From Zootoca vivipara (lineage: Eukaryota), in assembly GCF_963506605.1 (NCBI RefSeq), contig NC_083277.1, forward strand, positions 62,682,001 to 62,746,000: a DNA stretch of 64,000 nt, written 5' to 3'. Positions 14,461 to 51,854 of this stretch are shown here, in pieces. A program made the position numbers and the translations under genes. Numbering within the stretch: the stretch's first letter is position 1; each line of letters opens with the position of its first letter. Below the pieces are notes generated by a model. That model was not told the origin of the DNA and did no database searches. It worked only from the letters and a program-made list of their open reading frames with translations.

Positions 14461-14594
14461 NNNNNNNNNNNNNNNNNNNNNNNNNNNNNNNNNNNNNNNN
14501 NNNNNNNNNNNNNNNNNNNNNNNNNNNNNNNNNNNNNNNNNNNNNNNNNNNNNNNNNNNNNNNNNNNNNNNNNNNNNNNNNNNNNNNNNNNNNN
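14461..14594. other. Assembly gap (134 N)
   Basis: Run of n. Confidence 1.
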
Positions 14595-14781
14595 AGTTAC
14601 AGGGGGAAATAATTAGGGGGCGGGTCCCATCAACAAGTGTTTTTAAGAGCAATTATCTCCCAATAAATGAAATGGGTACATTTTAGGTGGGTGATCAGAT
14701 GGGTGACGACAACCAATAAACACAACAGCAATTTCAAGGTGGTTTTTCATTCTTCATGTGAGCCTTTCTTTCTTTTTTCAG

Positions 14782-17700: not shown

Positions 17701-18837
17701 CTGTCAAAATCATACTCACAGATGAAAATGACAACCCACCACAGTTCAAAGCTTCTGAATACGTCTTGTCTATCCAGTCCAATGTGAGCAGAGGGTCACC
17801 AGTCATTCAAGTACTAGCTTATGACGCTGATGAAGGAGTGAATGCTGATGTCACCTACTCTGTTGATTCAGTGGAGGAGATTATTGCAGAGGATGTGATT
17901 GAGATTAACACTGCAACTGGTGTTGTTCAAGTCAAAGAGAGTCTCCGCAGGCTAGAAAACAGGACAGTGAACTTCAAAGTCAAAGCTGAAGATGCAGGAC
18001 CTCCCAATTGGAATTCTGTTGTTCCAGTGAATCTTCAAGTTGTTCCAAAGGAGGTGTCCTTGCCAAGGTTTTCTGAGCCGCTATACACCTTCTCAGCATC
18101 TGAAGACCTGCCGGAGGGATCCGAAATAGGATCAGTTAGAGCTGTGGCAGAGGACCCTGTCATCTATAGTTTGGTAAAAGGTACCACTGCCGAAAGCAAT
18201 AAAGAGGGGATATTTGCTTTGGATAAACGAACAGGCACCTTGACTATTGAGAAGGCAATGGATCATGAGAAGATGAAATGGTACCAGATTGATGTTTTGG
18301 CTCACTGCTCACACCAGGATACTGACTTGGTCTCTTTGGTGTCCATCAACATCCATGTAAAAGATGTCAATGACAACAAGCCTGTTTTTGAGGCTGATCC
18401 TTACAGGGCCTTTGTAATGGAGAACATGCCACCAGGAACTACCGTGATTCAGGTCACTGCCAATGATCAAGATACTGGAAGTGATGGGCAAGTGAGCTAT
18501 AGCTTAGGATCAGAACCAAGCAACATCAGAGAGCTCTTCACCATTGACAGTGAAAGTGGTTGGATCATGACTCTTAAAGAGCTAGATTGTGAGGTTCAAG
18601 AAACCTACCAGTTTTTTGTTGTGGCGTCAGACCATGGTAGGAAACACCAGCTTTCTTCTCAAGCCCTTGTGGTGGTCACCATAACTGATGAAAATGACAA
18701 TGCTCCTCAGTTCACCTCTGAAATCTACAAAGGGTCCGTGGTTGAGAATGCTGAGCCTGGGCAAACGATCACCACTCTTAGAACTGTAGACAGTGATATT
18801 TCAGAGCAGAACAGACAAGTCACATGTTACATCACTG
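14782..18837 (+). CDS. FAT2: FAT2 giant internal exon (about 13 cadherin repeats)
   Basis: ttttcag|GG...ACTG|gtaaga; 4056 bp inside ORF 14667..18866, with repeated DxNDNxPxF, LDYE/LDFE and ATDxD motifs; a ~4-kb exon is typical of FAT1-3. Confidence 0.96.
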
Positions 18838-18977
18838 GTAAGAACCTATCTCTCTTAACGTTTTGATAAAGTAGAATACAACTTGATTTCTGGTAGGTTT
18901 GCTTGAACTTGAGAAGCACCTTATCCTATAATTACGGTAGTCTTGCTGAAATCTCTGCAGCTGATAATATCAGATGA

Positions 18978-29593: not shown

Positions 29594-30463
29594 GTAGATC
29601 CATCTTAGGCTCAAGTCACACATTCCGTGGGAGGATTCTGAGTGGCTCTCCCAGAATTTTTTTTATAAATGAAATGGAGCTGGAGAGCTGCCAGTTTCTT
29701 TAGAGCAGCAATGCTGGCTAAGGGGCTGTTTCTCACAACAAAAGTGCACCTATTAGGTAGCCTGCTGTTTGTTCTGTTGAGAGAAAGATACAAGTACCTT
29801 ACAGAGCAAACAGCAGCTTGGAAGTGTGTATTTTGATTGCAAAATCACACTAATGGTTGGGTTAAATAGCCGCTTCCCCAGTGCCACTGCTCCAACAGCA
29901 TTGGTAACCCACGCAGAAAGACCCTTTGGTAACCCACACCTTTAAACAAACATTCCCCACAAAATACTTAGCCCTGAATAAATTACAGGCACTCAGCTTT
30001 GCAAGTAAGTGAATATTTTGCCCACAGAATTTCAGAAGTTACAACATATATGTCTCCATCTGCCGGCAGTAAAATAAAGTTGGAAAAAAAATGGTTCCAA
30101 ACAACTTAAAAATAAAAGCATTTGGTTTCCTTCCTTCCTTCATTGGGTTAGCAAAGATGCTGGTTATAAAATCTCCATTTAGGGAGATTCAGTTCACTTG
30201 CAGGGAGCCATGGCCGCATGGCTCCTTCTTCCAGGAAGCTCAAAGAGAGAGGAAACAAAAGGCTGCCGGGAGCCTGCCAAACTCCACTCCCACTGGCAAC
30301 CTGAACTCAGATTAACCCTTTCATTATGCAAGTGTTTGTTGTTAACTGTATATTACATCATTTCATACCTTGAGTAGGAGACCTGAGTAGGAGAGGGAGG
30401 CATGCTAGCAACACGTTAGTGTTAGTGCAAAGTTGTAAACATCTGCCGAATTTCCCTCAACAG

Positions 30464-31274
30464 GTTACAGACAGTGGTATCCCTCCTCTCTCTTCATCTG
30501 CATTTGTAAACATCCAGGTGACGCAGCAAAGCAGATATCCACCTTCAGCCCTCTCTCTGGAGATTTTCATCAGTACTAATGAAAGAGCATTCCGCGGTGG
30601 GGTTCTTGGCAAAATTCATGCCACAGATCGAGACCCTCATGACACTCTGATGTACACTCTGGAGTCGGAAGTGCCAGAAAAGAGGCACTTCTCCGTGGGG
30701 GCTACAGATGGGAAGATAATTGCAGGCGAAAGTCTCCCGCACGGTCACTATGCCCTGAATGTAACTGTCAGTGATGGGACCTTTGCAGCCACAACCAGCG
30801 TCCACATCCACGTGTGGTCCTTCAGCCAGGAAGCTGTGGATAAGGCGGTGGTGCTGCACTTCCGCCACCTCACCCCTGAGGAGTTTATAGGCGATCACTG
30901 GCGCAACCTGCAAAGGTTTCTGGGAAGCCTCTTCGAAACCAGGCGGCAGAACATCCACATGGCTAGCTTGCAGCCTTCAGGTGCTACCAATGGTGTGGAC
31001 CTTCTGCTGGCCATTGGGGAGCCCCACCATTCGTTCTTTCAGCCCAGCTTCCTTGCTAGCCGGATTTCTGAGTCAGCTGAAGAGATGGACCAGCGAGTAG
31101 GGCTGAAGATGAAGAAGGTGACTCATGTCCCATGCCAGGAGGGGGACTGTACCACTCAGCGTGCTTGCAGAGAGACAATGCAGCTTGACCCGGGCATGGT
31201 GTTCACTTACAGTACCGCTCGACTCAGCGTTCTCACTCCTCGGCACAGTTTGGAACAAATGTGTTCTTGCAATG
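30464..31274 (+). CDS. FAT2: FAT2 coding exon (last cadherin repeat and linker)
   Basis: caacag|GTT...AATG|gtgaga; contains the FAT-family linker LTPEEFIGDHWRNLQRFL and YSTARLSVLTPRH; 811 bp. Confidence 0.94.
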
Positions 31275-31372
31275 GTGAGAAAGTCTTCTGATAAATCACC
31301 TCCTTGAAAGTATTTCAAGGTTTTCTGCTGGTGTCCTTTTTGAACATTGTAGAATGACCTGCATATTTTGTT

Positions 31373-33060: not shown

Positions 33061-35205
33061 TATGTTTATATATGTAGAGGTGCACTTTGCAAAAAAAAGG
33101 GAGGGGGAGGCAAAAAAACCCCAACCATTTTGGTTTCTTGAAAAGTCGGTAAGTTTCTGTCTTTATTTAAAGAAGTATTTCTAAACTGTCAACTTATAAA
33201 AGTAATATCATTGTGGTGTACAATAAAATCATTAAAACATAATAGAATTATAAAATCATAATATACAGAACAAATGGTCCAGAACCAGATTAATTCTCCA
33301 ATTACAACCGTCTGTTTTCAGTAGCCAATGAAATGGCCAAAATTGTAGGTGCTCCTCTGGTTTCAGCAGGAACAGCGTACCAGAATCCTGGTGCCACTGT
33401 ACTAAAAGCCTTAGTTCATGCAGAAGCTAAACAAATATGTGATAACTTTGGGACATCAGGCGTTATACAGTTTATACCAGTAGTAGCTTGGTAATGAACT
33501 GGCAATCAATGCAGAGCTTTCAGTATCAGGGTATCCTGCCAATTCAATGAACTTAGGAACTTGGGAGGCCTCGGGGTTTCCATTTCATTATGATTCAGGT
33601 TCATGGTTCAGTTCCTCTCATCCTGGCCACACAGGAAAACAGCAGTCATCAATTCAAGCGGGCTGCCATAAATATTTCAATACATATCTGTGTCTTTCAA
33701 GTGGAGATGTGCTGAAATATAGTGTCATGGGCCATGTGGTTGATCTGGATGAACGAATAAGCTTCTCACATGTGGGGTCAAAACTGATGTGGTGCAGGAG
33801 ACTGTCATCTGCTCACCCTGTTAACATAGGAACATAGAAAGCTACCTTACGCTGAGTGAGACCATTGGTCCATCTACCTCAGTATTGTCTACACTGATTG
33901 GCCACAGATCTCCAGGTGGAGGAGATATGTTTCAGGCAGAGGATATTCCCAGCCCTACCTGGAGATGCTGAGGATTGAACTAGGGGCCTTCTGCATGCAA
34001 AGAAGATGGCCTACCATTGAGCTACTAATGCCCTTTTTCCCTTTTAAAGCAGCCATGTCTACATATCGGGCACCTAATTTAATCCACAGAGCAGTGCTGA
34101 GGGAATGGGAACTTCAACCCTTCCCATCCCACGTGTTCCCGTTCAGCCTGAACCTGCTGTTAACCCCACTGTGGGGGTGAAGGACAGGCATCATCCATGA
34201 AGTCTATGGGGGCTTTTTACCTTCGCCACCCGCTTTCTTAAACAATGCTCATACAATTGCTTAAACTGAATTAGGTTGAGACTAGCTGCTAATCTGCAAG
34301 ACAAAAATTTGCACATTCAGATCGCACAATTATGGTGGACCTGCAGAGGCTGCACAACAAACCTATTCCCCCCCCCCCAAATATCAGACTTCTTGTGATA
34401 AGGAAAGTAATGGAAAAGACACTGGGAGGTGTGAGGAATGCTTGCCTTGATGCAACATCAGCAAACAGGTTGGAATGAATGCTTGTTAAATAGCCAGCAT
34501 TGACTAATTTCCATGCAGGTGGGGGGGGGGGGAGAGAATGACTGCTCAACAAAATGGCTGTCTGGTCTCCTACGCAGCATTCAGTAAAAAAAGAATATGC
34601 TTAACGGGCATAAGGTTAGGGAAATTGAATATCCTTTGATGATTCATAAGGGGAGAAGGCAGTCACAGAATTGCCTCCCACATTTCTAACACTCAAGAGC
34701 CATTGGATAAAGATGAATAGGCAAAGCGCTTAGCTAATTATAGCTATTCAGGTAGTCTGATGACAGTTTATAATAATTACTACACATAATTCATTAGCTT
34801 TTAATGATCTAGCCTGTTTACACAATAAGTCTGAGCTAAAAACACCTCCCGCATCTTGTTGCTGTTTTTCTCGCACATCTAATTGTTTTATCTTTTTGGC
34901 TGAAACACTTTGCTGGCAGAGAGTGTCACTTATTGTGGGACAGAATCCCCCCAGTTCCTTGATCCTTGTCTAGCTCTGGTTTTTCATGCTGAAATCAGTG
35001 GAATTAGAGAGATGCTTAGCACTTTTGGAAATCCAGTTCCACAGGTTTTCCTAGCGCTGGCTATCACAGGCACAGCCTCTAAGCCGAGGTGTCCGTTTAG
35101 TTGTTTCACCACAATTTTAATTAACTTCTTATCTTTGTTTTTATGTGATCCATAGCTTGTGTCTTTATTAGCAATGGTTCAGATTTGACAGATTGATTTT
35201 GTGTG

Positions 35206-35659
35206 TGTAAGAGAGAGGGCTTGCAGAGAGCAGCCCACTCTGCTTACTTCCACCAGATGGGAGAGCAGCAGCAAGTCTGGGAGTTCAAATCAGGAACAGG
35301 AAGGGTTAAGACGGGTCCAGGGCTCTGCAGAGTCCTGGTGGCTCAGCTCCAGGTTGGTAGCAGGGAAGCAGGGGAGGAGCTAGCTTCAGCAGGGGCTGGA
35401 AAGGAGGGAGGAGAGAGAACGGCACCTCAGGAGCCTGGTTTGGGACCACGGAGGACCCATAGTGCAAGGAGGAGGGGCGTTTGGAGTCTTAAAAGGGGGG
35501 TCAGAGCCCACGAGACGCCATTGTGGGCTTCTGCCCCATGCAGAGCAGACATGATTTGAGACATCTCACCACTGTATATAGCATGCACAATAAAACTATG
35601 AAAATCCAGAGGATGTGTGGAGTGCTTACTCGGGACTAGCCAACACCCCATCTGTGACA
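35206..35659 (+). repeat. 5' LTR
   Basis: TG...CA ends; TATA-like TTAAAA at 35489; AATAAA at 35589. Confidence 0.95.
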
Positions 35660-35661
35660 GC

Positions 35662-35672
35662 AAGCCCACAAT
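35662..35672 (+). promoter_or_regulatory. Self-priming primer-binding site
   Basis: AAGCCCACAAT, 2 nt after the 5' LTR, is the exact reverse complement of ATTGTGGGCTT at 35520-35530. Confidence 0.8.
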
Positions 35673-35981
35673 CTTTTGATGGCTACCCCGAGGGAAGAGG
35701 GCTGCAAATGTAGCAGCCGGCATGAAGTTGGCAGCATCTAAAGCAGAAGAGAGAGATGCCGAGGGAGGATTGGCCTGAGTTGCCAGCACCCTGCAACTAT
35801 GGAACGGCTCAAGCACCAGGTAGGCACCCGGGCACAGGGGAAGCCAAGCTTAGTGAACCGAGCAGCTCTGAACACAGCCAAGCCGGGGGAGCGGAGGCTG
35901 GACAAGCAGAGAGGACACTCGGGACGGGCCAGCACTTCGTAGGGCGACCCTCAGCACAAGCTGGCTCTAAGACTGAGAGGC

Positions 35982-38177
35982 ATGGTGGCGTGGAAGTGCA
36001 GGAGGCTGAGAGGCGAGTCCGGGCAGAGGGGACAGACGGAGGGGAAAGGCAGCGGCCACAAGTTCCCATACAGTCCCGGGGAGGCAGCTGCAGCACAGCA
36101 CAGCCCCCTCCAGCCAGATGTGATGCAGAGGGACAAAGCCCGCGCGCGGGTACTTTCAAACGCTGACGCGGGAAAACAGAGGGAAGAGAAAGGCGGGAGA
36201 TGCCTTTACAATGCACCCAGCCACTGGGTGGAACACTGCCCCCAGAGGAAGGAATGGCGAGAGCAGGCAGGCACAGACACAAGCCTGGATGCCAGATCAG
36301 GAGGGGAGGGGCCAGGCAGAGCACCAACAACTGAGCCCTCCCGTAACACCCCACAGCACGACAAAGAGATGGAAGTAAGTCTGCAGCTGCCAAGAGGCCA
36401 GACCCAGGAGACAGTCGGGCTTCTCTGCAGGGGCAGCAGCAATGATTTCCTATCGGTGGACTTTGCTAGGCAGAATCAGATTCCCCTTTTCCCAAGGAAG
36501 CTTCCCATGAGCGTCTCGGCCATAGACGGCAGGGAATTGCAGGAGGGTGAGGTCACGCAACAGACCCCCTCTCGGAAGATGACAGTGAACAAGCACGCAG
36601 AAGTGCTAGCTTTGGACTTAATGGACAATGACCCTGTGGGCAGCCAGCGCCGGGGAGATCTCACCTTTGGAGATGCAGACGGCAAGGAGCACTGCAGGAA
36701 AGAAGGAGAATCCTCAGGATCGCACCACATCAGCTCCCCAGGCGGATGGAACGACGCAGAGGCGGGGATGCAGGAAGAGAAACTGAGCCGACTCACCAAA
36801 GAGGACACTTTTACCCAGAACATACGGAGGGACTTGAGGGAGAAAAAGGGGGCAGGGGAAGGGCTTGCCGAGAAAGAGGGGTTACTCTTTAGCAATGATG
36901 CCCGGTATATGCCCCAGGACTCCCTCAGAGGGAAGATTCTCAGGCAATATCATGACAACCCCACGGAGGGGCATGCAGTACATGTCTTCACGAGGCTCAC
37001 ACCCAGTAAGGCCAGTCTTGGGCGAAACCCCAGAGCCTTCCCAGAGCAGGGGGAGGGGGAGATTGGGGGACCACCTATTGAGGCATGGGGTGAGAGGAGG
37101 GAGACAGTACACCAACAACTGGATGGAGACGTGGCAAGGAGCAATGAGGCTTACAAGGAGGGGGCAGACCATCACGGGGGACTGGAGAAGGTCTTCCACG
37201 GAGGCGACAGGGTCTGGCTGTGGTCAGAAGGCCTTCCCATGGGGGGAAGGGGGAAGAAGCTGGCACCCAGAAGGCTGGGGCCCTTCAAGGTTCTGACACA
37301 GATCAACCCTGTCACCTTCAGGGGGGAAGTACCTACAGCGAGAAAGGTCCATCCCGTGGGTCACAGGTCTTTGCTCTCACACTTTAGGGAAAGCCCAAGG
37401 TTCAGAGGACGTGACACACATCCAACACAAGACGCTGACAGGAGGGAGGGGGAGGAAATCACACAAAAGACACTAGACAGAAGGGTGGAGGGAGAAGGCA
37501 GCCAAGAGGTTCCAGAAAGAAAGGAAGAGGAGGAGGTCTACAGTGCCACAGCGAGCCCGGGCTCCCGGTGGGGGGAGGGGGGGTTAAAATGTCTGATGGC
37601 CAGGCAGGGCACTCCTGCTTCCCAAAACGCGGAGGCAACCACGCACACCATGCAAGGGGAGGACCGCACACTGGAACTGCACGCTCCTTTCTCCCACAGA
37701 CCCAAACCACCACACGTCAGTAGCACAGGGAACACAGAGGGGGAGGGCGATCCCAGGTGGGGAGCAGGGGAGACGCAGACCCAAGGAGCCCTCCGGGAAT
37801 CGGAAGCAATTTTCCAGAGGGAGGAGGAGGATGACAACGGAAGGAACTACACGGACCAGCCACCCAGCACCGACGGGGAACAGGATTTTACACACACTAC
37901 AGAGGAGGAAGACCTGTCAGGCTTCCAGCCCTCTTTACAGACATCAGACCAGGCAAACCAGGCCTCAGAAAGGGGGGGGGAGCCTGGAGGGGGGGTGGAT
38001 GTAAGAGAGAGGGCTTGCAGAGAGCAGCCCACTCTGCTTACTTCCACCAGATGGGAGAGCAGCAGCAAGTCTGGGAGTTCAAATCAGGAACAGGAAGGGT
38101 TAAGACGGGTCCAGGGCTCTGCAGAGTCCTGGTGGCTCAGCTCCAGGTTGGTAGCAGGGAAGCAGGGGAGGAGCTAG
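35982..38177 (+). CDS. 731-aa ORF of the LTR element: degenerate Gag knuckle-protease-integrase mosaic lacking RT/RNase H
   Basis: CLYNAPSHWVEHC (degenerate CCHC); LLCRGSSNDFLS...AIDGRELQEGEVTQQT (protease-like, no catalytic Asp); LRGKILRQYHDNPTEGH (integrase Zn-binding start); GDRVWL...KKLAPRRLGPFKVLTQINPVTF...HPVGHRSLL (GPF/SH3 module); stop lies inside the 3' LTR. Confidence 0.6.
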   Translation: MVAWKCRRLRGESGQRGQTEGKGSGHKFPYSPGEAAAAQHSPLQPDVMQRDKARARVLSNADAGKQREEKGGRCLYNAPSHWVEHCPQRKEWREQAGTDTSLDARSGGEGPGRAPTTEPSRNTPQHDKEMEVSLQLPRGQTQETVGLLCRGSSNDFLSVDFARQNQIPLFPRKLPMSVSAIDGRELQEGEVTQQTPSRKMTVNKHAEVLALDLMDNDPVGSQRRGDLTFGDADGKEHCRKEGESSGSHHISSPGGWNDAEAGMQEEKLSRLTKEDTFTQNIRRDLREKKGAGEGLAEKEGLLFSNDARYMPQDSLRGKILRQYHDNPTEGHAVHVFTRLTPSKASLGRNPRAFPEQGEGEIGGPPIEAWGERRETVHQQLDGDVARSNEAYKEGADHHGGLEKVFHGGDRVWLWSEGLPMGGRGKKLAPRRLGPFKVLTQINPVTFRGEVPTARKVHPVGHRSLLSHFRESPRFRGRDTHPTQDADRREGEEITQKTLDRRVEGEGSQEVPERKEEEEVYSATASPGSRWGEGGLKCLMARQGTPASQNAEATTHTMQGEDRTLELHAPFSHRPKPPHVSSTGNTEGEGDPRWGAGETQTQGALRESEAIFQREEEDDNGRNYTDQPPSTDGEQDFTHTTEEEDLSGFQPSLQTSDQANQASERGGEPGGGVDVRERACREQPTLLTSTRWESSSKSGSSNQEQEGLRRVQGSAESWWLSSRLVAGKQGRS

Positions 38178-38453
38178 CTTCAGCAGGGGCTGGAAAGGAG
38201 GGAGGAGAGAGAACGGCACCTCAGGAGCCTGGTTTGGGACCACGGAGGACCCATAGTGCAAGGAGGAGGGGCGTTTGGAGTCTTAAAAGGGGGGTCAGAG
38301 CCCACGAGACGCCATTGTGGGCTTCTGCCCCATGCAGAGCAGACATGATTTGAGACATCTCACCACTGTATATAGCATGCACAATAAAACTATGAAAATC
38401 CAGAGGATGTGTGGAGTGCTTACTCGGGACTAGCCAACACCCCATCTGTGACA
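38000..38453 (+). repeat. 3' LTR
   Basis: Copy of the 5' LTR; AATAAA at 38383; preceded by G-rich PPT. Confidence 0.95.
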
Positions 38454-38479
38454 GTGTGTTTTAGTGGTTTTAGTGTATC

Positions 38480-39568: not shown

Positions 39569-42256
39569 GCACCTTGATACAAAAAGAGGAGCTTGTAACT
39601 TACTGACTTCAAAATTATTATATATCTTTCCCCATTGCTGCAGCACAGCACTTAGCAGAGAAAACAAATTACTTTAAAATTACCTTTGAATCCATTGCCC
39701 CATTTGTTTAGTTTAAAACACGCACACAACTATTTTACTCATTTTAATACTTCAGTGCACAGTTTGTCCTAAGCACTTTTAAATCCCAATGATTTCAATG
39801 AGAGAATGAAGCAGTCTGCTCGGTTGACATCTTAAAGGGATTAACTTTGGTCAAATTGTATCTTTATGGTTGTTTTATCTTTCACCCCTTGAAATAGATT
39901 TTTTTTTCTTCCTTTCACCCTCCCAACATCTTGCAAACCAACAGCTTTCCTCCACAGCAATTTACATCGCATTCTGTGAGCAAAGCTGTTCAGCGTGGCT
40001 CATAAATGGTATAAAACATATGAAATTAAAATAACGTTATAAAGATCTGTTAAATGGCACAAATGCAAAGCCAGCAATCGAACAGGTATGAAGCCCCTCC
40101 CTAACAAGGAAACAAAAAAAGACAGTAAAGTGTAATTTGCAGAAATTGCAACAGATTTTTCACTTGCGAAACATAGGCTGAGCTTAGACAGGCCTTTTCG
40201 GAGAATAAATTCCATAGGGAAGGGCATTCTGGCAAGCACTCTTCTGCAGCCCTCCATAAACATAAGTGATAGGATGGACATAATAAGAGGGTGGGAACCA
40301 TAACTCAATACCTGAACACATGCCTTGAGTGCAGAAGGTCCCTGCTTCAATTCCTAGCTGGACTAGATGGGTCATTGGACTGATTCGGCAGGCTCATCAT
40401 GTGTTCTGTGAGCTACATATTTGGTGTGGGTATATGTATATCTTACTATTCACTATGATTTATTTGTTATTGGGAATATTGATGGTAGTAATAGCATGTT
40501 TAAGAAGAATAAAATAAATATATTGTTCTAGAAAGGAAGTAAGGTATAGTATTTCCTTGACTGTAATGATTCACTCCAAAGAAAATCACTGTAATCTCAC
40601 CTCATTAAGAATAATGATTTTCTTTAAACAAAATCCAGCAAACTAGCTCCTTATTCATACTATACAATTTCTGTAGAAAGGATATCCTTAGGGAAAGTAG
40701 GTTCCCCCTCCCCTTGAGATCTGTGTGAAGTTGCAATTTCACCACAACCACTCCAATGCTGTATGTCACTATACCACAGCGGTTGTCAAGGCAGATCTTT
40801 GCCACATTTCTTGCCCTGGAATTGACTCTGTGGAGAGTCAGGAAAACTTCTAGAGCAGCACACAGTGGTGGAAAAGGGGGGATAATTCCATCTGGAAAGC
40901 CAAAATGCTTCTGCTGACAGAACTATTGCTGTAGTAGGAGGGACTCAACAGCACACTGTAACTTTAGGTTTTCGCAATTAAAGTGGAACAAAGGGCTCTG
41001 TTACCCCAGCACAGCAGATCCACTTTATAAAACAGTAAGACTTTTTGTGGTTTTGAAAGTGGGGGAAATGTATTGAATGTGGGCATCCCACATTCCTACA
41101 AGCAAATCTGGATGAATGCAGGACCAGTGCTCATGGTTGCGTAAGCAAATCAAAACGGATCATCTAATCTCCACGTTAGCTTTGTGTAAGCAAATCAGGA
41201 TGAATGCTCAGGGTGGAATTCAACATAGCACTACGTGGGGTGGGGGTGCAGGACACCCCCACTCCCCCAAAAAACCCTGTTCTGGGGGTTCCACCAACCT
41301 TCCAGAGCAGATTTAGGAGGCGTTGAGGGGGAGGGGGAGGAAAGTCCCATTGCATGAGCAGACCTTGTTCTGTGCACACAACAACTTAGCTGAATCCTAC
41401 CTCCAGGAGCAGCTGGACTCTGCTTCCATCTTGCAGGGAAGCTGCTAATTATTACAATCGATCTTATTCTCTGCCTCTGTGTCTTCTCTGCCGACTCTCC
41501 CCACCCAGTGCAAAACTGTCAGCTGCCTTCCACTGTTTGGATTCTGCCAACACTCCTCCCTGGCGCCAGCAAAAGAGCAGCTCCAGCTTAGGCAGCAACT
41601 TCTATAGCACTAACAAGAGGGCGAGAACAGAGTTGTTGCACAGCCATTTGGTAGGCAAGTCGTCAGTCAAGTCTTCCTGAGTGCCAGTGTTCTTTCTTTA
41701 CTTCTGAATAATTCGAGGCCCAAATGGCAGGCATGATTACTATGAATTTTGAATGGCTGTAAATTCCATGAAGAATCAATCTTAATTAATGGCAATGCAA
41801 GTTTGGGTTATAATGTATGTACTGGTTTTTTTTTCTGAGCTTCTTTGGATTTACGTTTCCATTTTGTTTGGTTTATCTATATTCTTTTGGTGCGGGAACC
41901 CACAATAAAATATCACTTTTAAAATGTGTTTGATGCTTAGGCTGTGTACACACTGTACCTTTCAACCACATTTGAAGCTCATCCCTGCCCCCACTCAAAG
42001 AATTCTGGGCACTATAGTTAACCCTTTGCAGAGTCACAATTCCCAACATCCTTAGCAAACTGCCGTGCCCTGAATTCATTGAGGAGGGAAATGTGCTAAG
42101 AATGTGCTTAAAGGTATAGTGTGACTGCAGACCCAGACTCTAAAAACAGAACAAGAAAGCAAAATGGGCACTTCTTATTTATTTATTTATGTATTTTTTT
42201 ATGTATTTATGTATTTAAAAAGCAAACACCTCTGCCTGTTTTGGTATGTTTTGCAG

Positions 42257-42698
42257 CTTGTGAATGGAGTGCCTCGCCTTGGGTACAGATGTCGGAGTGG
42301 TTTCAGCGGTAACCTTTCGTCCAGCCAATTTGTGGGTGACAGAAAGTGGCACTCTCTCTTCCTGGAAGTGAAAGGCAATTCCATCCGTTTGCTTGTTGAC
42401 AGCTTGGGAAATGCCTCTCTGCAGCTCCCCGAGGCCTGCAACCCTTCCCATTCCAGAAGAGATCTGCTCATTGGAGGGTTTGTGCAGCACCACCAGGCTC
42501 AGAGGGTCACTGATGGGTTCAGAGGGTGCCTGAATGCCATTACGCTCGATGGAAGAGACCTGGTGGTCTTACCAAAGGAAAAGAGGTCCAGGGCTGTTGT
42601 TGAAGAGGCGGGCGTTCGGCAATGCTGCCCACACACCGGTGCCTGTCGGAGCAACCCGTGCCTCAATGACGGGCTCTGCATTGAGATACAAGGTGGAG
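42257..42698 (+). CDS. FAT2: FAT2 coding exon (laminin-G and start of EGF1)
   Basis: ttgcag|CTT...GGAG|gtaagg; DRKWH, GFRGCLNAI, CRSNPCLNDGLC; 442 bp. Confidence 0.94.
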
Positions 42699-45600
42699 GT
42701 AAGGGCTGTGTTAATAACAGTAATGGGCAATGTACAATTTTTTGGGGAGGGGGGATAGAGCAGCGTCCCCAACTTGACAGCCTCCAGATGTTTTGGTCTT
42801 CAGCTCCCAACATCCCTGACCATTGACCATGCAGGCTGAGGCTGATAGGAGTTGTACTGAAACATCCATAGGGCACAAGGCTAGGGAAGGCTGGCCTAGA
42901 GAAATAACAGCAGGGATTAGTCACATTTAAGGAAAATGGCTTCTGTGAAAATATGAACGATAGTGGAGACATTGGTCTGTTTAGGATGTCATGTTGCCTC
43001 TTCATAAAGCATGGCTTAAGAAGCCAGAAAGGAACATAAAACCTGCACACAGGGCTTTTTTCAGGGGAAACTCACAGAAACTCAGGCCCGGCACCTCTCA
43101 GGTGGGTTCCAGTACCTCTCAGGTGGGCACCATTTCCATTCTAAGAAAATGAGGGAGGTGTTCATGGTGAATTCCAGCACCTCTTTTTCTAGAAAAATAA
43201 CACCGCCTGCACGCACTTCCTTTACATCTGCTCCTGGCTTAATATCCTGCTTGGTTAACCAACATTAAACCAGACTTCTCTGTTTGGGATCTACCAAGGA
43301 ACTCTGGTTTAAACAAGCCAGGATCTTCATGCCAAAGCCAGCACACGAGGGGAGGAGGAAGGCAGAGCCAAGAGACTTGACTGGGGCTTCCTATGCCGTG
43401 GTTTATGGAACTGGCGGTGTTACAGGTGAACTGGGCTTGTGTGACGCTGGCCACTGTAGCCAGGTATTCCCACTAGCTGGCTTTGCGGTCATTGCTGGAA
43501 CTCCTTGAGTTGATAAGGTCAATTAGGAAATTCTAAATGATTTGATCATTGAAGGACCAAACCGCTTCATTGCCTTCATTCAAATGTGCCTGGGGGAAAA
43601 GGCAGCAGAAAGAAAGCTCTTCCTCCAATTTTCTGTTCCCGTCCCTTCTTTCAATAACTTAAGCACTTGGGAGTCTGGTCTTTAGATCCATTTGTGCTGT
43701 CAGACAGGAGTAGAGGTTTATTTGGTTTGTCTGTACCTACCTATCTACCTAACTACCTACCCAATATTTGTATGCTGCCCTTCCTCCAAGGAGCTCAATG
43801 CATTTTCTCCACATAGCATCCCTAAGCTGGGGTTGGGTGGACTAGCCTCAAGTCGTCCAATGAGCTCAATGCAGGGCTGCCAGACAAATGGCAGCTGCTG
43901 AATTCCTACACATCAGCCTCTCCCCCTTTTCGTTTAAATCAACCATGCAAGGGACAAGAATGTGAAAAGTGTGGGATTTTCTCTTTGCCAGCATTTGCTG
44001 CAAAGGGGGAAGGGTGTGGAATGGATGAAGGTTTTAGCCTGTGGCCAGCGAAGAAGATTTGGATAACAAGAATGTTTAGGCTGGCAGGATGGGAGGAGCA
44101 GGGGAACCTGTTTTGGCCTGCGAGTATTTTGGAAGGCAAGCGAGTGGCACTGGGAAAGGGGCTGAAATAATTGGTTTGGGAACTCCAAAGAGAGGCATAT
44201 TCATTATCAAGGCATGCATGTGCTCAGGCCCAAAGTCAGTGAGTAATAATTTCCAATTAGAATGCTGTGGTGGTTATAATGAAGGAGTATTGGGAGGCTA
44301 GACATGGAAAGATAGCACATTAGAAGAGGAAAAGATGAGGGCTTTTAAGGGGTTTGGCACCATACTTAAAGCAAAATCACACATAGCAAAATGTGTGTTG
44401 TTCTGGTGCCTACTGAGCTACCTCTGGTTTGGTGGCCACATGTAAACACTGATCCTTGGACAAATGGCTTTAATGGTGACCCCAGACATTCTCACTACGA
44501 CCGCATTTCAAGCAGCCTCATACCACTTTAAGCAGCCGTCGCTTCCACAAAACAAGTGGTTTGTTAAGGGGCAGGTGCTGAGAGTTGTTAGGAAACCACT
44601 ATTCCCCTCACAGAGCCCAGAGTGGTTTACCATTCAGCCCCTCCTCCCAGGGAACTCTAGGAATTGTAACTGTGGGGGAAATAGGGCTCTCCTAACAACT
44701 CTCAGCACCCTTAACAACCATACTCCCCAGGGTTCTTTGGGGAAAGCCATGACTCTTTAAAGTAGTATAAACATATGCTCCAAGTGGAGCCTTACATTCA
44801 TACGCACAGTCCTTGATTGACTGGTTTTATTTCTATTCAGTAATGTAACCCATCTTCTTCACTTAGGGGAAAAAGACAAATCATAAACTCCAGCTCTAGT
44901 GCACTAGCATAATGTGCAATGAGCTTTAAGCAGAATCATTTTTACACTCTCTGTCACTCTGTCCACATCAGTGGAAAGCTTTCTGTCCTCATGGGACGAA
45001 GCCACAAATTTTATAAGCAAGGAGGGCACCCAGCAAGGAGGGCACCCACCCTTTCCCTATCCTGGGGTGGTGGTGGGACTGATGGGTGCTTGGAGGTGAC
45101 TTGGATAGCCGTGTGTGGTAATGGGAGACACGTACTGAGAAACACTTTGAACCACCTTCTGTAGGCATGTGCACCTTTTGTTATTTCTGCCCGGAGCCTG
45201 CTGTCGAGCTGCATGCCCTGACAGGTGAGCAGTTAGCAAAAGGCGGAGAGCACACGTCCTCCTTTCCTTCAGCTCAGAGCAAAAAGCTTACAATTCTTGT
45301 CTTGTCAGATCAGCAGCTCAGGCACACTTGTCAGACAACAATTTTCAGAGAGACAAGGGTGTATAAGTTCATGTCCTCACAGATTTACATGCACTTCTGC
45401 AGCACATGGTGACAGCATGCTTGGGGACATGCATGACAGTCGCCGTGTGAGGGTGGGAAGATGCCCGTACGAAGTATGCGCCTGAAATAAATGCAGAAGC
45501 CATGGTTGGGGTGTTCTAGAATGCCAACAATAAGCTAGAACAGCACCGGAATTGGTATCTGAGCATCGTCTGGTCATTTTGTAAGTGCATTTCACTTGGG

Positions 45601-47570: not shown

Positions 47571-49103
47571 TTGAGAAATTGGAGCCTCTGCTCAAGGCAC
47601 AGCACCAACAATCGCCCAAGTCAGGCTCTGGCTAAAGCCTCAGGGCTAGGAAGAGCATCTCACCAGCCTGACCAACACTCACCACCAGGCCCAGGTGGCA
47701 ATGTGTAGGCATCACTTCACTTGGGAGTAGAGCTTGCCTCCCATCCAACTAGCTGCTCCCCTTCTTCCTCCATCCACCTGCTTTTGGGGAGCTCTGAGAA
47801 AGGTTCAAGGGTATCCTCAGAGCCGGGTATTGTAGGTGAGTTGGCCAGAAAAATGCCTCTGCCGCTGCTTTCTTTCGCTACTGTGGCTTTTCTAAGCTGA
47901 GTGGGGCTTTTTAAGCTTTAAAAGTTGCAAAAGTACTTTCTAGCAACAGCAAAGCACATTAGCGCCAGAGGGCCTTCTCAGTGACTTTACCCAAAATCCC
48001 TTTGTCTGAAGAAGGGTGTCTTTGGCTCCTTCTCAGAACCCAGGTGGCAGAGAAGTGGTTGTAAAAAAAAAGTAGGAGAGGGGGCTGTGGGGAGCAGGGG
48101 GAAGGATCAAACTGCTGCAGCGAAAATGAGAGTGGAGGCAGGGAAGTGGGGGGGGGACATTGGCTGGATTGTGCCAATGACCTCTGAAGTTTGGCACTTT
48201 TAGAGCTGTTGTTAGGATGACATAGGCCAACAAAAAGCTGGCATTCATAAAGTTTATGGCCTCTCATCCTGTCCACCAGCATTTCCATGCCATTACCATG
48301 AGACTGTCTGGCCTTCTATGAACATTTGTTTTTCCTTTATCTTTGATACCATGTCATACGCAGGTAAAGTATTCTCAAAGTGTGCTCATGCTATAGAATG
48401 ATTATCACTGAAGAACAATGACTTCAAGTTTTGAAATATTATGACCTTTTACAGTATTAAAATGGAAATGGTTTTGTTAGCACACCAGCAATATTTACAG
48501 TATATTAAAAAAACATTTTTAAGGAATTAGGGTGAACATTCTGAACAGAACATTGTTTATTACAAAAATAGCTTTGTTTTTTTAACCTTGGTTTTTTTGC
48601 ATATTGAATCAGTTCTTCTGAGTTAGATCCTGATAGCTGGATTTAGCTACACTGAACTGTAATTCTTCCACTGAAGGCAAAATGAGTTAAGATACCTAAT
48701 TGTTTCTTCAATGGTACTATGGACACAGCAATTTTTAGCTAGGCTGGAATGCAGTTTTTTTGTGATTTATTTATTTCAAAAATAATTTCTTTACAAAACT
48801 CTAAAAGACATTAAAACAAAATGAAAGCACACAGTGATACTTTAAAGGCAGTAAAATCAACAGGAGGAATATAAAGCAACAACAAACAAGCGAAAATAAG
48901 GCAGATCAAATTGAATTAACAGGCCTGATAAAATTAAAAGGTATTGTCCTGGCACTGAAATGATATCAGGATTGGTGCAGGGGTTTGTTTGTTTTTTGTT
49001 CCTCCGGCACTCTAACACCTCCCTCCCATGATCTCACAGATAGAGTCTCTGATACATGTGATCTCACATTGTCTAAAGATGCCTTCCATCATCTCTTCCG
49101 CAG

Positions 49104-49684
49104 ATGTGAAAAAGTTGCTGAGAAATGCCTGGAAAACCCATGTCTGAACTCTGCACGCTGTGTGAATTCCGATGGTTCCATTCACTGCATCTGCACGGGC
49201 GACTTCCAGGGGGCATTCTGCACGCAGAAAATTGTGACTCCAACGATTAGTCCATCCAGCTGGATCTTGGGGCCTGGAGAGATTGCCGAGATTTCTGCTG
49301 GGCTGTTAGGTGTCGTCATCCTGGTGACAGCGTTTATACTCATCCGCAAATTCTACTGCCACAAAGTCAAGGCTCACAAGCCTGTGGCCAAAGAAGACCC
49401 GGACCTGCTCTCCAAAAGCGAATTATCCAAAAGTGTCGGGGTCGGCACTCAAGGTCTTAACCCCATTGAACTAAACATCCTCAGCGACGGCCACCACCAC
49501 CATCTCGATACGCTAGACCCAGGCAAGCCTGCTGTCACATCGGAGTTTGCGACCTTCAACACAAACCATGTTCAGAAACAGCGGGGCGCCATTGTATGCA
49601 GTGTGGCCCCCAATCTCCCAATTGCCACGCCCTCACCTGAAAATGAGCCCGTCATCAAGAGCACCTGGGCTGGAGAAAAGATGG
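49104..49684 (+). CDS. FAT2: FAT2 coding exon (EGF3, transmembrane helix, proximal cytoplasmic tail)
   Basis: ccgcag|A...ATGG|gtttgt; TM ISAGLLGVVILVTAFILI followed by HKPVAKEDPDLL and CSVAPNLP; 581 bp. Confidence 0.92.
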
Positions 49685-51854
49685 GTTTGTTTGACCTTCT
49701 TTCTCTCTCCCCCACCCTCCTTCCCTCTGCTGCATTGGGGTGTTTCCAAATGACGTTCCTTTCCAGCAGTTAGTGTATCGCAGTTGTTATTGTGTGAGAT
49801 GCCTTTGTCTCACAGTAGCCATTTTGTCACGGGGATCTCCATTTCTTGCCATTCAAAACACAATATTTTGTCTCTGGGGAAATGTATTTTCTCCTCTCTC
49901 GGTTGTGCTAGGGTTGATGTATCATGTAACTTTGGCTGTGCTTCTCCTGCCATTTTGTGGTCTTAAAAAAAAAATTGTTTTCAATTTTTGAGAAGCTTTC
50001 CTCTCTGAACCCCTCAAGCACAGGAACTTAATGTTGCCCTTAAAAGAAACAGAAGTGAGCTAGCTAGCCAGGCTACCTCCACATCCTCCTTCAATGCAAC
50101 ACTTGAGGGTTACAACAAAATAATATTTGATTGGTAGGTTTTCCTTATCTCTCACACCAGTGCACAGATTTCCCTCCAGGTAAAAGGATTTGGTGACCGC
50201 TTGTACCGTATGACTATCACACCAAAGCAAGATTGCCACACACACACACACCACACATACAACCATTAGATGGGGAAATGGTGCTGATCTGTGCTTTTGT
50301 ATTATCTGAAAAGAGTGAGTGTGCAGTCAGCAAAACAACAAGAAGCCACTAGCTCAGATAGACAAAAGTAATGTAGGCAAAAGGTTTGCTCCTTCCAGCC
50401 CCATGGTTTTGCTCTTGATCCCTGGAATCTTCATGCTGCCTTGTCAGTGGTATAGCCTGCTGTTGAAATGTGTGGATCCTGATGTTCTGTCAGAAAGGGC
50501 ATTTTCACACACCCAAATCTAGACTGGGTTGCCTACGATCTGTTTCAACACAGCAGTGCTTTTGTCTGGGCCTGCAAAGTTTGATTATACTTGCCTTTTT
50601 ATAAAAAGAGAGCAGCTTGGCAATCAATTTGGGGGGAGGGGAATACTATGGCATTTATCAGCTTGAAGTTCCTTCCCCTGCAAGCTGAAGCTGCATGCAA
50701 ATAAGATGAAATTAACTTTAATCAAATGCCAGTAACAACATATTTCAGTAACAAAGTAATGTGATGGATGGGTGTGCCATATTAAAGGGAAGGTGAATGA
50801 GATAACCAGTCAGAATGGGAGAAAATATCATGGTCCACCTGTTTTGCATTTTGGATAAGGGAGAATGGGATGACCATAGGCTTAGAAATGAAGAATGGTC
50901 ACATTCTTAATAGAAATTTTGCATGTTTGATCCCAGAATTTTCTAATATGTGGGAGGTAATTAATGTTCTGATCACTAGAGGCTAGGTAAAAAAGAGGTG
51001 GGAAGTGTTCCCACCTGTTTTCCATGGTGAAATAACAGAACTGCCCAATAACTCAACATGGGGCTGCTACTAGAAACAGCATCTCCAGGGTAAGTTTGGC
51101 CCCATAACAGGAGGCATCGCTGATCCCAAGGCAGCCCAATGGGGTGCCTGCTAGATGTTGTTGGACTCAAGCTCCCATCAGCCCCAACCAGCACAGCTGA
51201 TGGTCAGGGATGATGGGAACTGAAGTCCAGCAACACCTGCAGGCCACCACATTGGCTACTCCTGACTTATACCATGTTGCAGTGATACCACATTGTTCCC
51301 TTCCCTGCTCCTGCCAGTAGCATCCTTGAGGGGGCTGAGTAGAATGCTGCTGCTGCTGCTGTTAAAGATTTCTTACCCCCTATTCGCCATAAGGGTGGGT
51401 TACAGCAATTTTAAAATACAATACAGTATTAAAATCGGTTAAAGCAACTTACAATCAAATGAATGGGGTTGGTCCTAAAAACATATATCTCAAGTGTCAA
51501 AGGTATAGGACAAAAACTGCATAATGAAGACTCCAGATGCAACTGGGAGCTAATTCCACAGTTTAGTGTCAGAAAATGCCCTCTCCCAGTGTGTTGCCCA
51601 CAAACTTCTGATGATGGTCCAACTAAGAAAAGGACCCCTACTGCTGATATTAACACCCAAGAGGGCCTGCAGGGAAAGAGGTGGTCTTTCATATATTTGG
51701 AGCCTGAGTCATTTAGGGCTTTGAACGTTTAATTTGAGCACCTTGACAGTACCACACATACAAATGGCTATATAAACCAACAGGTGAAGGAGGGGAGAAG
51801 TCTACTGTGTGAGGATCTAAATTCTTCCTCGTCCCTCAAGGACTGTATTCCCCA

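What the first reader, a model, noticed from the sequence alone, without database searches (positions are those of the whole stretch)
35206..38453. Very young non-autonomous LTR element with an intact tRNA-independent self-priming signal
Seen: apparently identical 454-bp LTRs, a perfect 5-bp TSD and a PPT, but no TGG-type tRNA PBS. Instead AAGCCCACAAT (35662-35672) is exactly complementary to ATTGTGGGCTT (35520-35530), which begins 31 nt after the start of the TATA-like TTAAAA (35489), where the transcript should start. Known: fission-yeast Tf1 primes reverse transcription by annealing the first 11 nt of its own mRNA to the PBS, and vertebrate sushi-group elements show similar structures. Inference: this is a recently mobilised parasite of an active lizard Tf1/sushi chromovirus that kept every cis signal while losing RT, RNase H and the integrase core. 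An autonomous helper should exist, and the insertion may be polymorphic.
Basis: partly seen in the sequence, partly recalled or inferred. Interest (0 to 1): 0.8.

Follow-up and report, generated by a model that had tools for sequence, protein, structure and literature searches.

The report
Young self-priming parasitic LTR retrotransposon
This is a very recent, still polymorphic insertion of a stripped-down lizard LTR retrotransposon, one of roughly a hundred copies, that has lost its own enzymes but keeps the sequence signals for starting DNA copying from its own RNA end instead of a tRNA, a mechanism already known for its Tf1/sushi relatives.

Summary
The two 454-nt LTRs are 100% identical. 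They are flanked by GTGTG and have a polypurine tract. No TGG-type tRNA site follows the 5' LTR. Instead, 35662-35672 is the exact complement of 35520-35530 (chance about 0.001).

The internal part is a Ty3/gypsy remnant. The Gag knuckle and protease active site are dead. RT/RNase H and the integrase core were removed by two in-frame deletions, and only the Tf2-1-type integrase SH3 domain is recognisable.

It is one copy of a family. Four Zootoca vivipara RefSeq 'uncharacterized proteins' are other copies. Contig depths in a DNA run suggest about 100-150 internal copies and many more LTRs. That individual's contig stops exactly where an empty site would, so the insertion looks polymorphic.

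The primer geometry matches relatives fetched from metagenomes, whose primer sequences differ: an 11-nt primer starting with A, 31 nt after a TATA-like box, and a PBS 2 nt after the LTR.

Two things were not shown. The transcription start is unmapped because only contigs were available, and no close autonomous helper was found.

Self-priming in vertebrate Tf1/sushi elements is published, so this is a new member of a known kind. The scan noted similar 11-nt signatures at seven other places in this genome (unchecked). A stable hairpin across the U3/R border that would mask the primer is an extra, unverified lead.

The parts
35201..35205 (+). 5' copy of the target-site duplication GTGTG
   Evidence: Sequence. 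It lies in a (TG)n context. The predicted empty site is ..TTTTGTGTG|TTTTAGTGG.
35206..35659 (+). 5' LTR, 454 nt, TG..CA
   Evidence: 100% identical to 38000-38453. A whole-LTR contig is present in run X3 (record 17).
35489..35494 (+). TATA-like TTAAAA, 31 nt before the primer start
   Evidence: Relatives have TATA-like motifs at -32 to -38 from their primers.
35497..35537 (+). Hairpin across the inferred U3/R border; its 3' arm contains the self-primer
   Evidence: MFE -28 kcal/mol, z -4.69, 0 of 200 shuffles as stable. If it is included in the RNA, primer:PBS pair probability falls from 0.92 to 0.00.
35520..35530 (+). Putative self-primer, the inferred first 11 nt of the transcript (start of R)
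   Evidence: Exact complement of 35662-35672. Duplex -16.3 kcal/mol. No variant listed here in four runs. The start site itself is not mapped.
35589..35594 (+). AATAAA polyadenylation signal, followed by a GT-rich stretch (inferred R/U5 border near 35608-35620)
   Evidence: Its position near the LTR's 3' end fits Sushi-clade LTRs as described in PMC3601003.
35628..35646 (+). U5 arm of a U5-leader duplex that crosses the primer/PBS duplex (pretzel-like)
   Evidence: Pairs with 35676-35693, -21.3 kcal/mol, shuffle P 0.08. The core 9-nt inverted repeat was found.
35662..35672 (+). Primer-binding site, 11 nt, 2 nt after the LTR
35676..35693 (+). Leader arm of the U5-leader duplex
35775..35942 (+). 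Remnant of the upstream (Gag-side) frame, same frame as the long ORF, closed by TAG at 35940
   Evidence: RefSeq models of other copies (P0154, P0155) start here and splice out 35820-36356.
35982..38177 (+). 731-codon open frame made of dead Gag-knuckle, protease and integrase pieces; it runs 178 nt into the 3' LTR
   Evidence: Pfam SH3_Tf2-1 at aa 408-468. Mapped on P0004. DSG is RGS and the CCHC is broken. Family variants are 8 synonymous to 23 non-synonymous, as expected under neutrality.
37969..37999 (+). Polypurine tract abutting the 3' LTR
   Evidence: Length variants occur in its G runs among copies (table 4).
38000..38453 (+). 3' LTR
38454..38458 (+). 3' copy of the target-site duplication GTGTG

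Best explanation
A very young, still segregating insertion of a non-autonomous Ty3/gypsy LTR retrotransposon of the Tf1/sushi (chromovirus) kind. It belongs to a family of roughly 100-150 copies in a lacertid lizard (Zootoca vivipara by its closest proteins). It encodes no working Gag capsid, protease, RT, RNase H or integrase, so it must be copied by the proteins of another element. Its cis signals are intact. U3 carries a TATA-like box. The transcript is inferred to start at A35520. R runs to a poly(A) site shortly after AATAAA (35589). The first 11 nt of the RNA fold back onto the 11-nt PBS 2 nt past the LTR. By analogy with Tf1, the helper's RNase H cuts after nt 11 and the freed 3' OH primes minus-strand DNA. 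The PPT primes the plus strand, and the TG..CA ends are used by the helper's integrase, giving a 5-bp duplication. Because the plus strand copies the primer, the PBS is rewritten from R at every cycle, which explains a perfect 11/11 match in a fresh copy. Shown here: the anatomy, the loss of coding capacity, the multi-copy status, the likely empty allele, the statistical weight of the R/PBS match, and the same geometry in relatives. Inferred: the start site, the RNase H cut, and the helper.
For: LTRs are identical and the TSD and PPT are present. The R/PBS complement is exact, with chance about 0.001. There is no TGG PBS and no tRNA or Rfam match. Domain loss was mapped on P0004. Four Z. vivipara RefSeq proteins on four chromosome-sized contigs are 96%-type copies. 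In DNA run X10, internal contigs have depth 780-1,930 against 11.7 for the flank. The flank contig leaves the stretch exactly at 35206, and no variant is listed inside either arm in four runs of two organisms. Elements found through related Pol proteins show 10-12-nt primers with different sequences. All start with A, lie 32-38 nt after a TATA-like motif, and have the PBS 1-2 nt after the LTR. In the thermodynamic ensemble the primer:PBS pairs have probability 0.82-0.96 when the RNA starts at 35520. A U5-leader duplex crossing the central duplex resembles the published three-duplex 'pretzel' (bioRxiv 10.1101/2022.12.06.519325). The literature states that self-priming is a common feature of Tf1/sushi elements from fungi to vertebrates (PMC6317226; PMC4600332; PMC7175516).
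Against: The transcription start is not mapped: all runs were Logan contigs and their RNA status is a guess. The overall 5' fold is no more stable than shuffles (z -0.48). The third 'pretzel' duplex is weak and the U5-leader duplex is only marginal (P 0.15 and 0.08). There is no covariation within the family because both arms are invariant. No autonomous partner with this LTR was found; the closest autonomous proteins are about 36% identical, and no chromodomain is detectable. Clade placement rests on integrase C-terminal and protease remnants only, since RT is absent. The metagenome relatives are probably fungal and distant. Some showed no clear signature (L007) or only an 8-10-nt partial match (L024, L070).
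Confidence: 0.72

Rival explanations
1. The element is real and non-autonomous, but the 11-nt R/leader complement is a structural long-range pairing (packaging, dimerisation or translation control). Reverse transcription would then be primed by something else, such as a tRNA fragment or another small RNA.
For: A U5-leader stem and a strong U3/R hairpin show that this leader is rich in structure. No experiment here shows priming. Only one tRNA could be compared.
Against: The complement sits 2 nt after the LTR, where a primer must anneal for correct LTR formation. No other candidate PBS is nearby (the first TGG is 21 nt away and has no T-arm-like continuation). The same placement and length recur with unrelated sequences in relatives. 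The clade is documented to self-prime.
Confidence: 0.12
2. The 11-nt match is a coincidence in a GC-rich LTR.
For: Short inverted repeats are common, and 7-8-nt matches occur in 7-25% of shuffles.
Against: Matches of 11 nt or more occur in about 0.1% of controls. In addition, the partner lies 31 nt after a TATA-like box and before the poly(A) signal. Both arms are unchanged in contigs of four runs of two organisms.
Confidence: 0.04
3. The identical LTRs are an assembly collapse, a polishing artefact or a recent gene conversion, and the insertion is old.
For: High-copy repeats are prone to mis-polishing, and no raw long reads were seen.
Against: Both LTRs carry the same non-majority bases, for example at 35463 and 35636, where all or nearly all contigs of four runs read another letter. 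Polishing toward the family would have removed these. Another individual appears to have the empty site.
Confidence: 0.04
4. The 731-codon frame is a domesticated host gene and the LTR structure is incidental.
For: The frame is far longer than chance allows (stop frequency about 3.4% per codon from composition). NCBI annotates four copies as proteins.
Against: Variants among copies are 8 synonymous to 23 non-synonymous, against 77% non-synonymous sites expected without selection. Catalytic motifs are destroyed. There are about 10^2 near-identical dispersed copies with LTRs. The upstream part of the frame is already closed by a stop.
Confidence: 0.03

Closest known systems
Tf1/Tf2 of Schizosaccharomyces pombe (self-primed Ty3/gypsy chromoviruses)
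   Same: There is no tRNA PBS. An 11-nt PBS just after the 5' LTR is complementary to a sequence in the LTR placed where the mRNA should start. A U5-leader duplex flanks the central duplex. The integrase has a C-terminal SH3 domain of the Tf2-1 Pfam family (PMC7175516; bioRxiv 10.1101/2022.12.06.519325).
   Different: The host is a vertebrate. The element has no RT, RNase H, integrase core or detectable chromodomain, so it cannot cut its own primer. The start site and the cut are not shown. A strong hairpin spans the U3/R border; whether Tf1 has one was not checked.
Vertebrate sushi-group elements (sushi-ichi and relatives; Butler et al. 2001, as cited in PMC6317226 and PMC4600332)
   Same: These are vertebrate Ty3/gypsy elements predicted to self-prime. 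AATAAA lies close to the LTR's 3' end, as in the Sushi LTR model (PMC3601003). The closest full-length proteins are lizard 'Gypsy integrase-like' Pol proteins, and more distant ones carry Chromo and DUF4939/Ty3-capsid Gag domains.
   Different: This element is a deletion derivative. Its LTR termini (TGTAAGA.. / ..TGTGACA) each depart by one base from the published Sushi motifs TGTYANR / CNTNACA. Butler et al. could not be read here.
Non-autonomous LTR retrotransposons mobilised in trans (plant LARD/TRIM; mouse ETn with MusD; own knowledge)
   Same: LTRs, PBS, PPT and TSD are intact and the internal region lacks enzymes. Copy number is high and activity is recent.
   Different: Here the retained priming signal is a self-primer. 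The parasite therefore depends on a helper whose RNase H recognises and cuts that RNA structure, not merely on a shared tRNA.

Membership tests
LTR retrotransposon (structural definition) | Two direct LTRs with TG..CA ends, a target-site duplication, a PBS after the 5' LTR and a PPT before the 3' LTR | tested here: met
   The TSD lies in a (TG)n context.
Non-autonomous (trans-mobilised) LTR element | Lacks RT, RNase H and integrase catalytic core | tested here: met
   Pfam finds only SH3_Tf2-1 and a sub-threshold start of the zinc finger. Mapping on P0004 shows two deletions. The protease and knuckle motifs are dead.
Non-autonomous (trans-mobilised) LTR element | Multiple dispersed, near-identical copies and evidence of recent insertion | tested here: met
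   There are four RefSeq copies on different chromosome-sized contigs. The contig depth ratio is about 65-165. The LTRs show 0 of 454 differences. An empty-site-type contig is present in X10.
Non-autonomous (trans-mobilised) LTR element | An autonomous partner sharing LTR ends, PBS and PPT | tested here: inconclusive
   No protein closer than 36-46% identity was found in two large protein searches. Contigs that share only 37257 to the 3' end hint at a related family.
Tf1-type self-priming | No PBS complementary to a tRNA 3' end | tested here: met
   There is no TGG within 20 nt of the LTR. There is at most a 5-nt complement to the window's tRNA-Lys, and no Rfam hit. A full lizard tRNA set was not available.
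Tf1-type self-priming | A PBS of about 11 nt next to the 5' LTR, complementary to a sequence inside the LTR | tested here: met
   The match is 11/11 at offset 2 nt, with chance about 0.001.
Tf1-type self-priming | The complementary sequence is the very 5' end of the mRNA | not testable with these tools
   Only contigs were available. Indirect support: TTAAAA lies at -31, and the sequence around A35520 looks initiator-like (own knowledge). The same TATA-to-primer spacing occurs in relatives.
Tf1-type self-priming | Three-duplex 'pretzel' RNA structure around the primer/PBS duplex | tested here: inconclusive
   The central duplex is present. The U5-leader duplex is -21.3 kcal/mol with P 0.08. 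The third duplex is weak, at -8.9 kcal/mol with P 0.15.
Tf1-type self-priming | RNase H cut between nt 11 and 12 that releases the primer | not testable with these tools
   This needs biochemistry or cDNA end mapping.
Tf1/sushi group of chromoviruses | Placement by RT/integrase phylogeny | tested here: inconclusive
   RT is absent. The integrase C-terminus hits SH3_Tf2-1 (E 7e-10). The best full-length relatives are Ty3/gypsy Pol proteins of lizards, and further relatives have Chromo and sushi-type Gag domains. No labelled Tf1 or sushi references were available for a tree.
Tf1/sushi group of chromoviruses | Chromodomain at the integrase C-terminus | tested here: not met
   No Chromo hit at E up to 1 in this ORF, nor at the thresholds used (E up to 0.001 and 0.01) in the nearest autonomous proteins P0004 and P0157. 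The aligned stretch looks like a decayed remnant.

The most novel reading that the evidence does not exclude
The self-primer may be gated by where the RNA starts. A very stable hairpin (35497-35537) pairs the end of U3 with the primer. The copy of the primer in the 3' R, and any read-through RNA such as the host gene's pre-mRNA running through this sense-oriented intronic copy, would then be masked. Only RNA initiated at the element's own start site could fold onto the PBS. Comparable U3/R hairpins appear in some self-priming lineages fetched here but not all, which would make this a recurrent control device of self-primed retroelements that I did not find described.
Probability: 0.2. Interest if true: 0.55.

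Novelty: new member of a known kind. Interest (0 to 1): 0.35.

Why it matters
It documents ongoing or very recent LTR retrotransposition in a lizard. A parasitic family of about a hundred copies is still producing insertions that differ between individuals, one of them in sense orientation inside an intron of a large FAT-type cadherin gene. It also shows that a stripped-down element can retain the self-priming leader. That ties it to a helper with the matching RNase H activity and gives a simple sequence handle (LTR plus the R/PBS pair) for finding that helper. The family could serve as a population marker. Mechanistically it adds nothing new unless the U3/R masking hairpin proves functional.

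Tried and rejected
R/PBS covariation among close relatives and a helper search in lizard DNA were therefore impossible.
- An exact-pattern scan of metagenome contigs for the R-primer region found nothing.
- Rfam gave only a chance-level lncRNA hit.
- ARAGORN found one tRNA (Lys-CTT, 63358-63431), which has no meaningful complement to the leader.
- Two large protein searches found no autonomous protein closer than 36-46% identity and none from Zootoca.
- The runs labelled 'RNA?' could not be used for expression or start mapping. They are contigs, and one holds a contig bounded exactly by the LTR ends, which looks like DNA.
- Domestication of the ORF was considered and rejected on the synonymous to non-synonymous ratio.
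- The hairpin idea was tested on 13 related elements and is not universal.
- Lin & Levin 1997 and Atwood-Moore 2006 are not held in the library, and Butler et al. 2001 could not be read either. Their content is cited only through papers that were read.
Full report
**Observation**

The stretch 35206-38453 is a complete LTR element.
- The LTRs (35206-35659 and 38000-38453) are each 454 nt, without a single difference. blastn extends the match by one shared G.
- The LTRs start TG and end CA.
- GTGTG flanks both sides (35201-35205 and 38454-38458). It lies inside a short TG run, so it is weaker evidence than a unique pentamer.
- A purine tract (37969-37999) abuts the 3' LTR.
- The 11 nt at 35662-35672, starting 2 nt after the 5' LTR, are the exact reverse complement of 35520-35530.
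- TTAAAA begins at 35489, 31 nt upstream of 35520.
- The first TGG after the LTR is at 35680. The leader has no more than 5 nt of complement to the only tRNA in the window, and Rfam finds nothing.

I tested the R/PBS match against chance. A perfect complement of 11 nt or more, allowing any start 0-8 nt after the LTR and any partner in the LTR, occurs in 0.09% of 20,000 dinucleotide shuffles of the LTR. It occurs in 0.13% of 8,612 mock leaders taken from the rest of the window.

**What the internal part is**

A 731-codon frame (35982-38177) fills most of the interior and runs 178 nt into the 3' LTR. Pfam recognises only a Tf2-1-type integrase SH3 domain (aa 408-468, E 7e-10) and a sub-threshold beginning of the integrase zinc finger.

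I mapped the frame on the nearest autonomous protein, P0004. This is a Podarcis muralis Pol with protease, RT, RNase H, zinc finger, integrase core and SH3. The frame aligns in three blocks:

| ORF residues | P0004 residues | Region |
|---|---|---|
| 151-238 | 14-116 | protease |
| 241-331 | 603-693 | linker and first half of the zinc finger |
| 334-577 | 889-1114 | end of integrase, SH3 and tail |

Two in-frame deletions therefore removed RT/RNase H and the integrase core. In the remaining pieces the protease DSG reads RGS, the flap region is gone, and the Gag CCHC knuckle has lost a cysteine. Upstream, the same frame is closed by a stop at 35940, and no capsid domain is detectable. No chromodomain is detectable either.

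The element cannot make any of the proteins it needs.

**It is a family, and it is recent**

- Four Zootoca vivipara RefSeq 'uncharacterized proteins' (XP_060127682, XP_060125876, XP_060128446, XP_060131580) are near-identical to this frame; P0001 is 96% identical. They lie on four different chromosome-sized contigs. Two of the models splice out 35820-36356.
- In DNA run X10 the single-copy flank contig has depth 11.7. Contigs of the interior have depth 780-1,930, a rough ratio of 65-165. The summed LTR depth is some ten times higher again. The tool warns that depth is no copy number, so this is an order of magnitude only.
- A second organism (X8) holds the element at much lower depth, with long unbranched contigs.
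- The X10 flank contig (1,414 nt) matches 35000-35206 and then continues for 161 nt that do not lie on the LTR. An empty site would read ..TTTTGTGTG followed by TTTT.., which matches the stretch up to 35206 and no further. That individual thus appears to lack the insertion. I could not see the 161 letters, so this is a strong inference, not proof.
- Both LTRs of this copy carry bases that all or nearly all contigs in four runs read differently (35463, 35636). A collapse or polishing to the family sequence would have erased these.
- Zero differences in 454 sites puts K below about 0.0066 at 95%. At an assumed 1e-9 substitutions per site per year that is under about 3 million years, and the polymorphism suggests far less.

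**The open frame is not a gene**

- 31 variant positions among copies fall in the frame. Eight are synonymous and 23 non-synonymous, against 77% non-synonymous sites expected without selection.
- The interior has only 12.9% T, which lowers the stop frequency to about 3.4% per codon. That cannot by itself explain 731 open codons.
- The frame is best read as a not-yet-decayed remnant carried along by rapid amplification.

**How priming most likely works**

Published work states that the first 11 bases of Tf1 RNA pair with the PBS and that RNase H cuts between bases 11 and 12 to make the primer (PMC7175516). Self-priming is a common feature of the Tf1/sushi group from fungi to vertebrates (PMC6317226; PMC4600332; bioRxiv 10.1101/2022.12.06.519325).

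The element here fits that pattern in placement, length and promoter geometry. To see whether the geometry is a rule, I fetched 80 loci encoding related Pol proteins from metagenome contigs and examined those with LTR pairs or 5' ends.
- Several independent lineages show 10-12-nt primers with unrelated sequences, for example in L028, L037, L072, L009, L043 and L063.
- All of these primers begin with A.
- The PBS lies 1-2 nt after the LTR.
- Most have a TATA-like motif 32-38 nt upstream of the primer.
- One copy (L060) keeps the duplex through three G-U pairs.

This is covariation at clade level, and the window's element (A-start, 11 nt, offset 2, TATA-like at -31) conforms.

Further points on the window's own element:
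- In the thermodynamic ensemble the primer:PBS pairs have probability 0.82-0.96 if the RNA begins at 35520.
- A U5-leader duplex (35628-35646 with 35676-35693, -21.3 kcal/mol) crosses the central duplex, as in the published three-duplex 'pretzel'. Its shuffle P is only 0.08, and the third duplex is weak.
- Because the plus strand copies the attached primer, the PBS is rewritten from R at each cycle (established logic of LTR reverse transcription). A perfect match in a fresh copy is therefore expected.

**What is not shown**

- The start site is unmapped. Every run offered was Logan contigs, the 'RNA?' labels are guesses, and one such run has a contig bounded exactly by the LTR ends, which looks like DNA.
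- Neither arm varies in the family, so there is no within-family covariation.
- No helper was found. The best autonomous proteins are 36-46% identical and none is from Zootoca.
- Contigs that match only from 37257 to the 3' end, and read a more canonical integrase motif just upstream, point to a related family that may include the helper.

**An extra lead**

A hairpin spanning 35497-35537 pairs the end of U3 with the primer. Its energy is -28 kcal/mol, z is -4.7, and none of 200 shuffles is as stable. If 20 or more upstream nucleotides are part of the RNA, the primer:PBS pairing probability drops from 0.92 to 0.00.

This would mask the primer copy in the 3' R and in read-through RNA. That is relevant here because the element lies in sense orientation inside an intron of a plus-strand FAT-type cadherin gene. 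Similar hairpins occur in the L037/L019/L030/L060 lineage and in L063, but not in L049, L072, L009, L068 or L028. The feature is recurrent, not universal, and its function is speculative.

**Comparison and verdict**

In mechanism the element most resembles Tf1/Tf2 and the vertebrate sushi group. In lifestyle it resembles trans-mobilised derivatives such as ETn or plant LARDs. Membership of the Tf1/sushi group is only partly testable because RT is missing and no chromodomain is detectable.

Self-priming in vertebrate sushi-type elements has been in the literature since 2001, and non-autonomous LTR elements are common. This is a new member of a known kind: a sound observation with a largely correct reading and moderate interest. 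The scan's own notes list similar 11-nt self-priming signatures at seven other places in this genome (unchecked).

Noticed in passing
window 35497-35537: A very stable hairpin lies across the inferred U3/R border (-28 kcal/mol, z -4.7). Its 3' arm is the self-primer, and its U3 arm repeats the PBS core AGCCCAC. Including it abolishes predicted primer:PBS pairing. Comparable hairpins occur in some related self-priming elements (L037, L019, L030, L060, L063) but not in others.
   Followed up: partly
window 14667-18866, 30419-31291, 42164-42826, 48985-49773 (+ strand): Cadherin, laminin-G and EGF exons of a FAT-type cadherin gene lie on either side of the element. The LTR element is therefore an intronic, sense-oriented insertion that brings two AATAAA signals and usable splice sites, and it appears polymorphic.
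   Followed up: partly
window 35982-38177; proteins P0001, P0153, P0154, P0155: NCBI annotates four copies of this dead Gag/PR/IN frame in Zootoca vivipara as 'uncharacterized proteins'. Two of the models use an intron equivalent to 35820-36356. Variants among copies look neutral (8 synonymous, 23 non-synonymous).
   Followed up: partly
window 35203-35559 and 38015-38353: A second frame stays open for 112-118 codons through U3 into R. In copy P0153 a shift at the G-runs of the PPT puts the long ORF into this frame. Other notes of the scan report LTR-encoded peptides in this genome.
   Followed up: no
window 37254-37257 onward: Several contigs in X10 and X3 match the element only from about 37257 to the 3' end. 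Just upstream they read a more canonical integrase SH3 motif. This points to a related family sharing the 3' part and LTR, and possibly to the helper.
   Followed up: no
window 36396-36561: There is a dense cluster of about 15 differences between two sub-families in the protease remnant. Depth is about 780 for this copy's type and about 1,000-2,000 for the other. This suggests recombination between sub-families rather than even divergence.
   Followed up: no
L028, L037, L045, L072, L009, L043, L049, L063, L019 (metagenome loci): Chromovirus-like elements, probably fungal, have 10-12-nt self-primer/PBS pairs of unrelated sequence. All primers start with A, and the PBS lies 1-2 nt after the LTR.
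   Followed up: partly
window 36617 and 36904 (run X8 contigs): Loose ends reading transposase-adapter-like sequence (CTGTCTCTTATACACAT) are library artefacts in the public contigs, not variants of the element.
   Followed up: no
window 63358-63431: A tRNA-Lys (CTT) gene on the + strand, unrelated to the element's PBS.
   Followed up: partly
window 14461-14594: A run of N (assembly gap or mask) lies just upstream of the large cadherin exon. It was left untouched.
   Followed up: no
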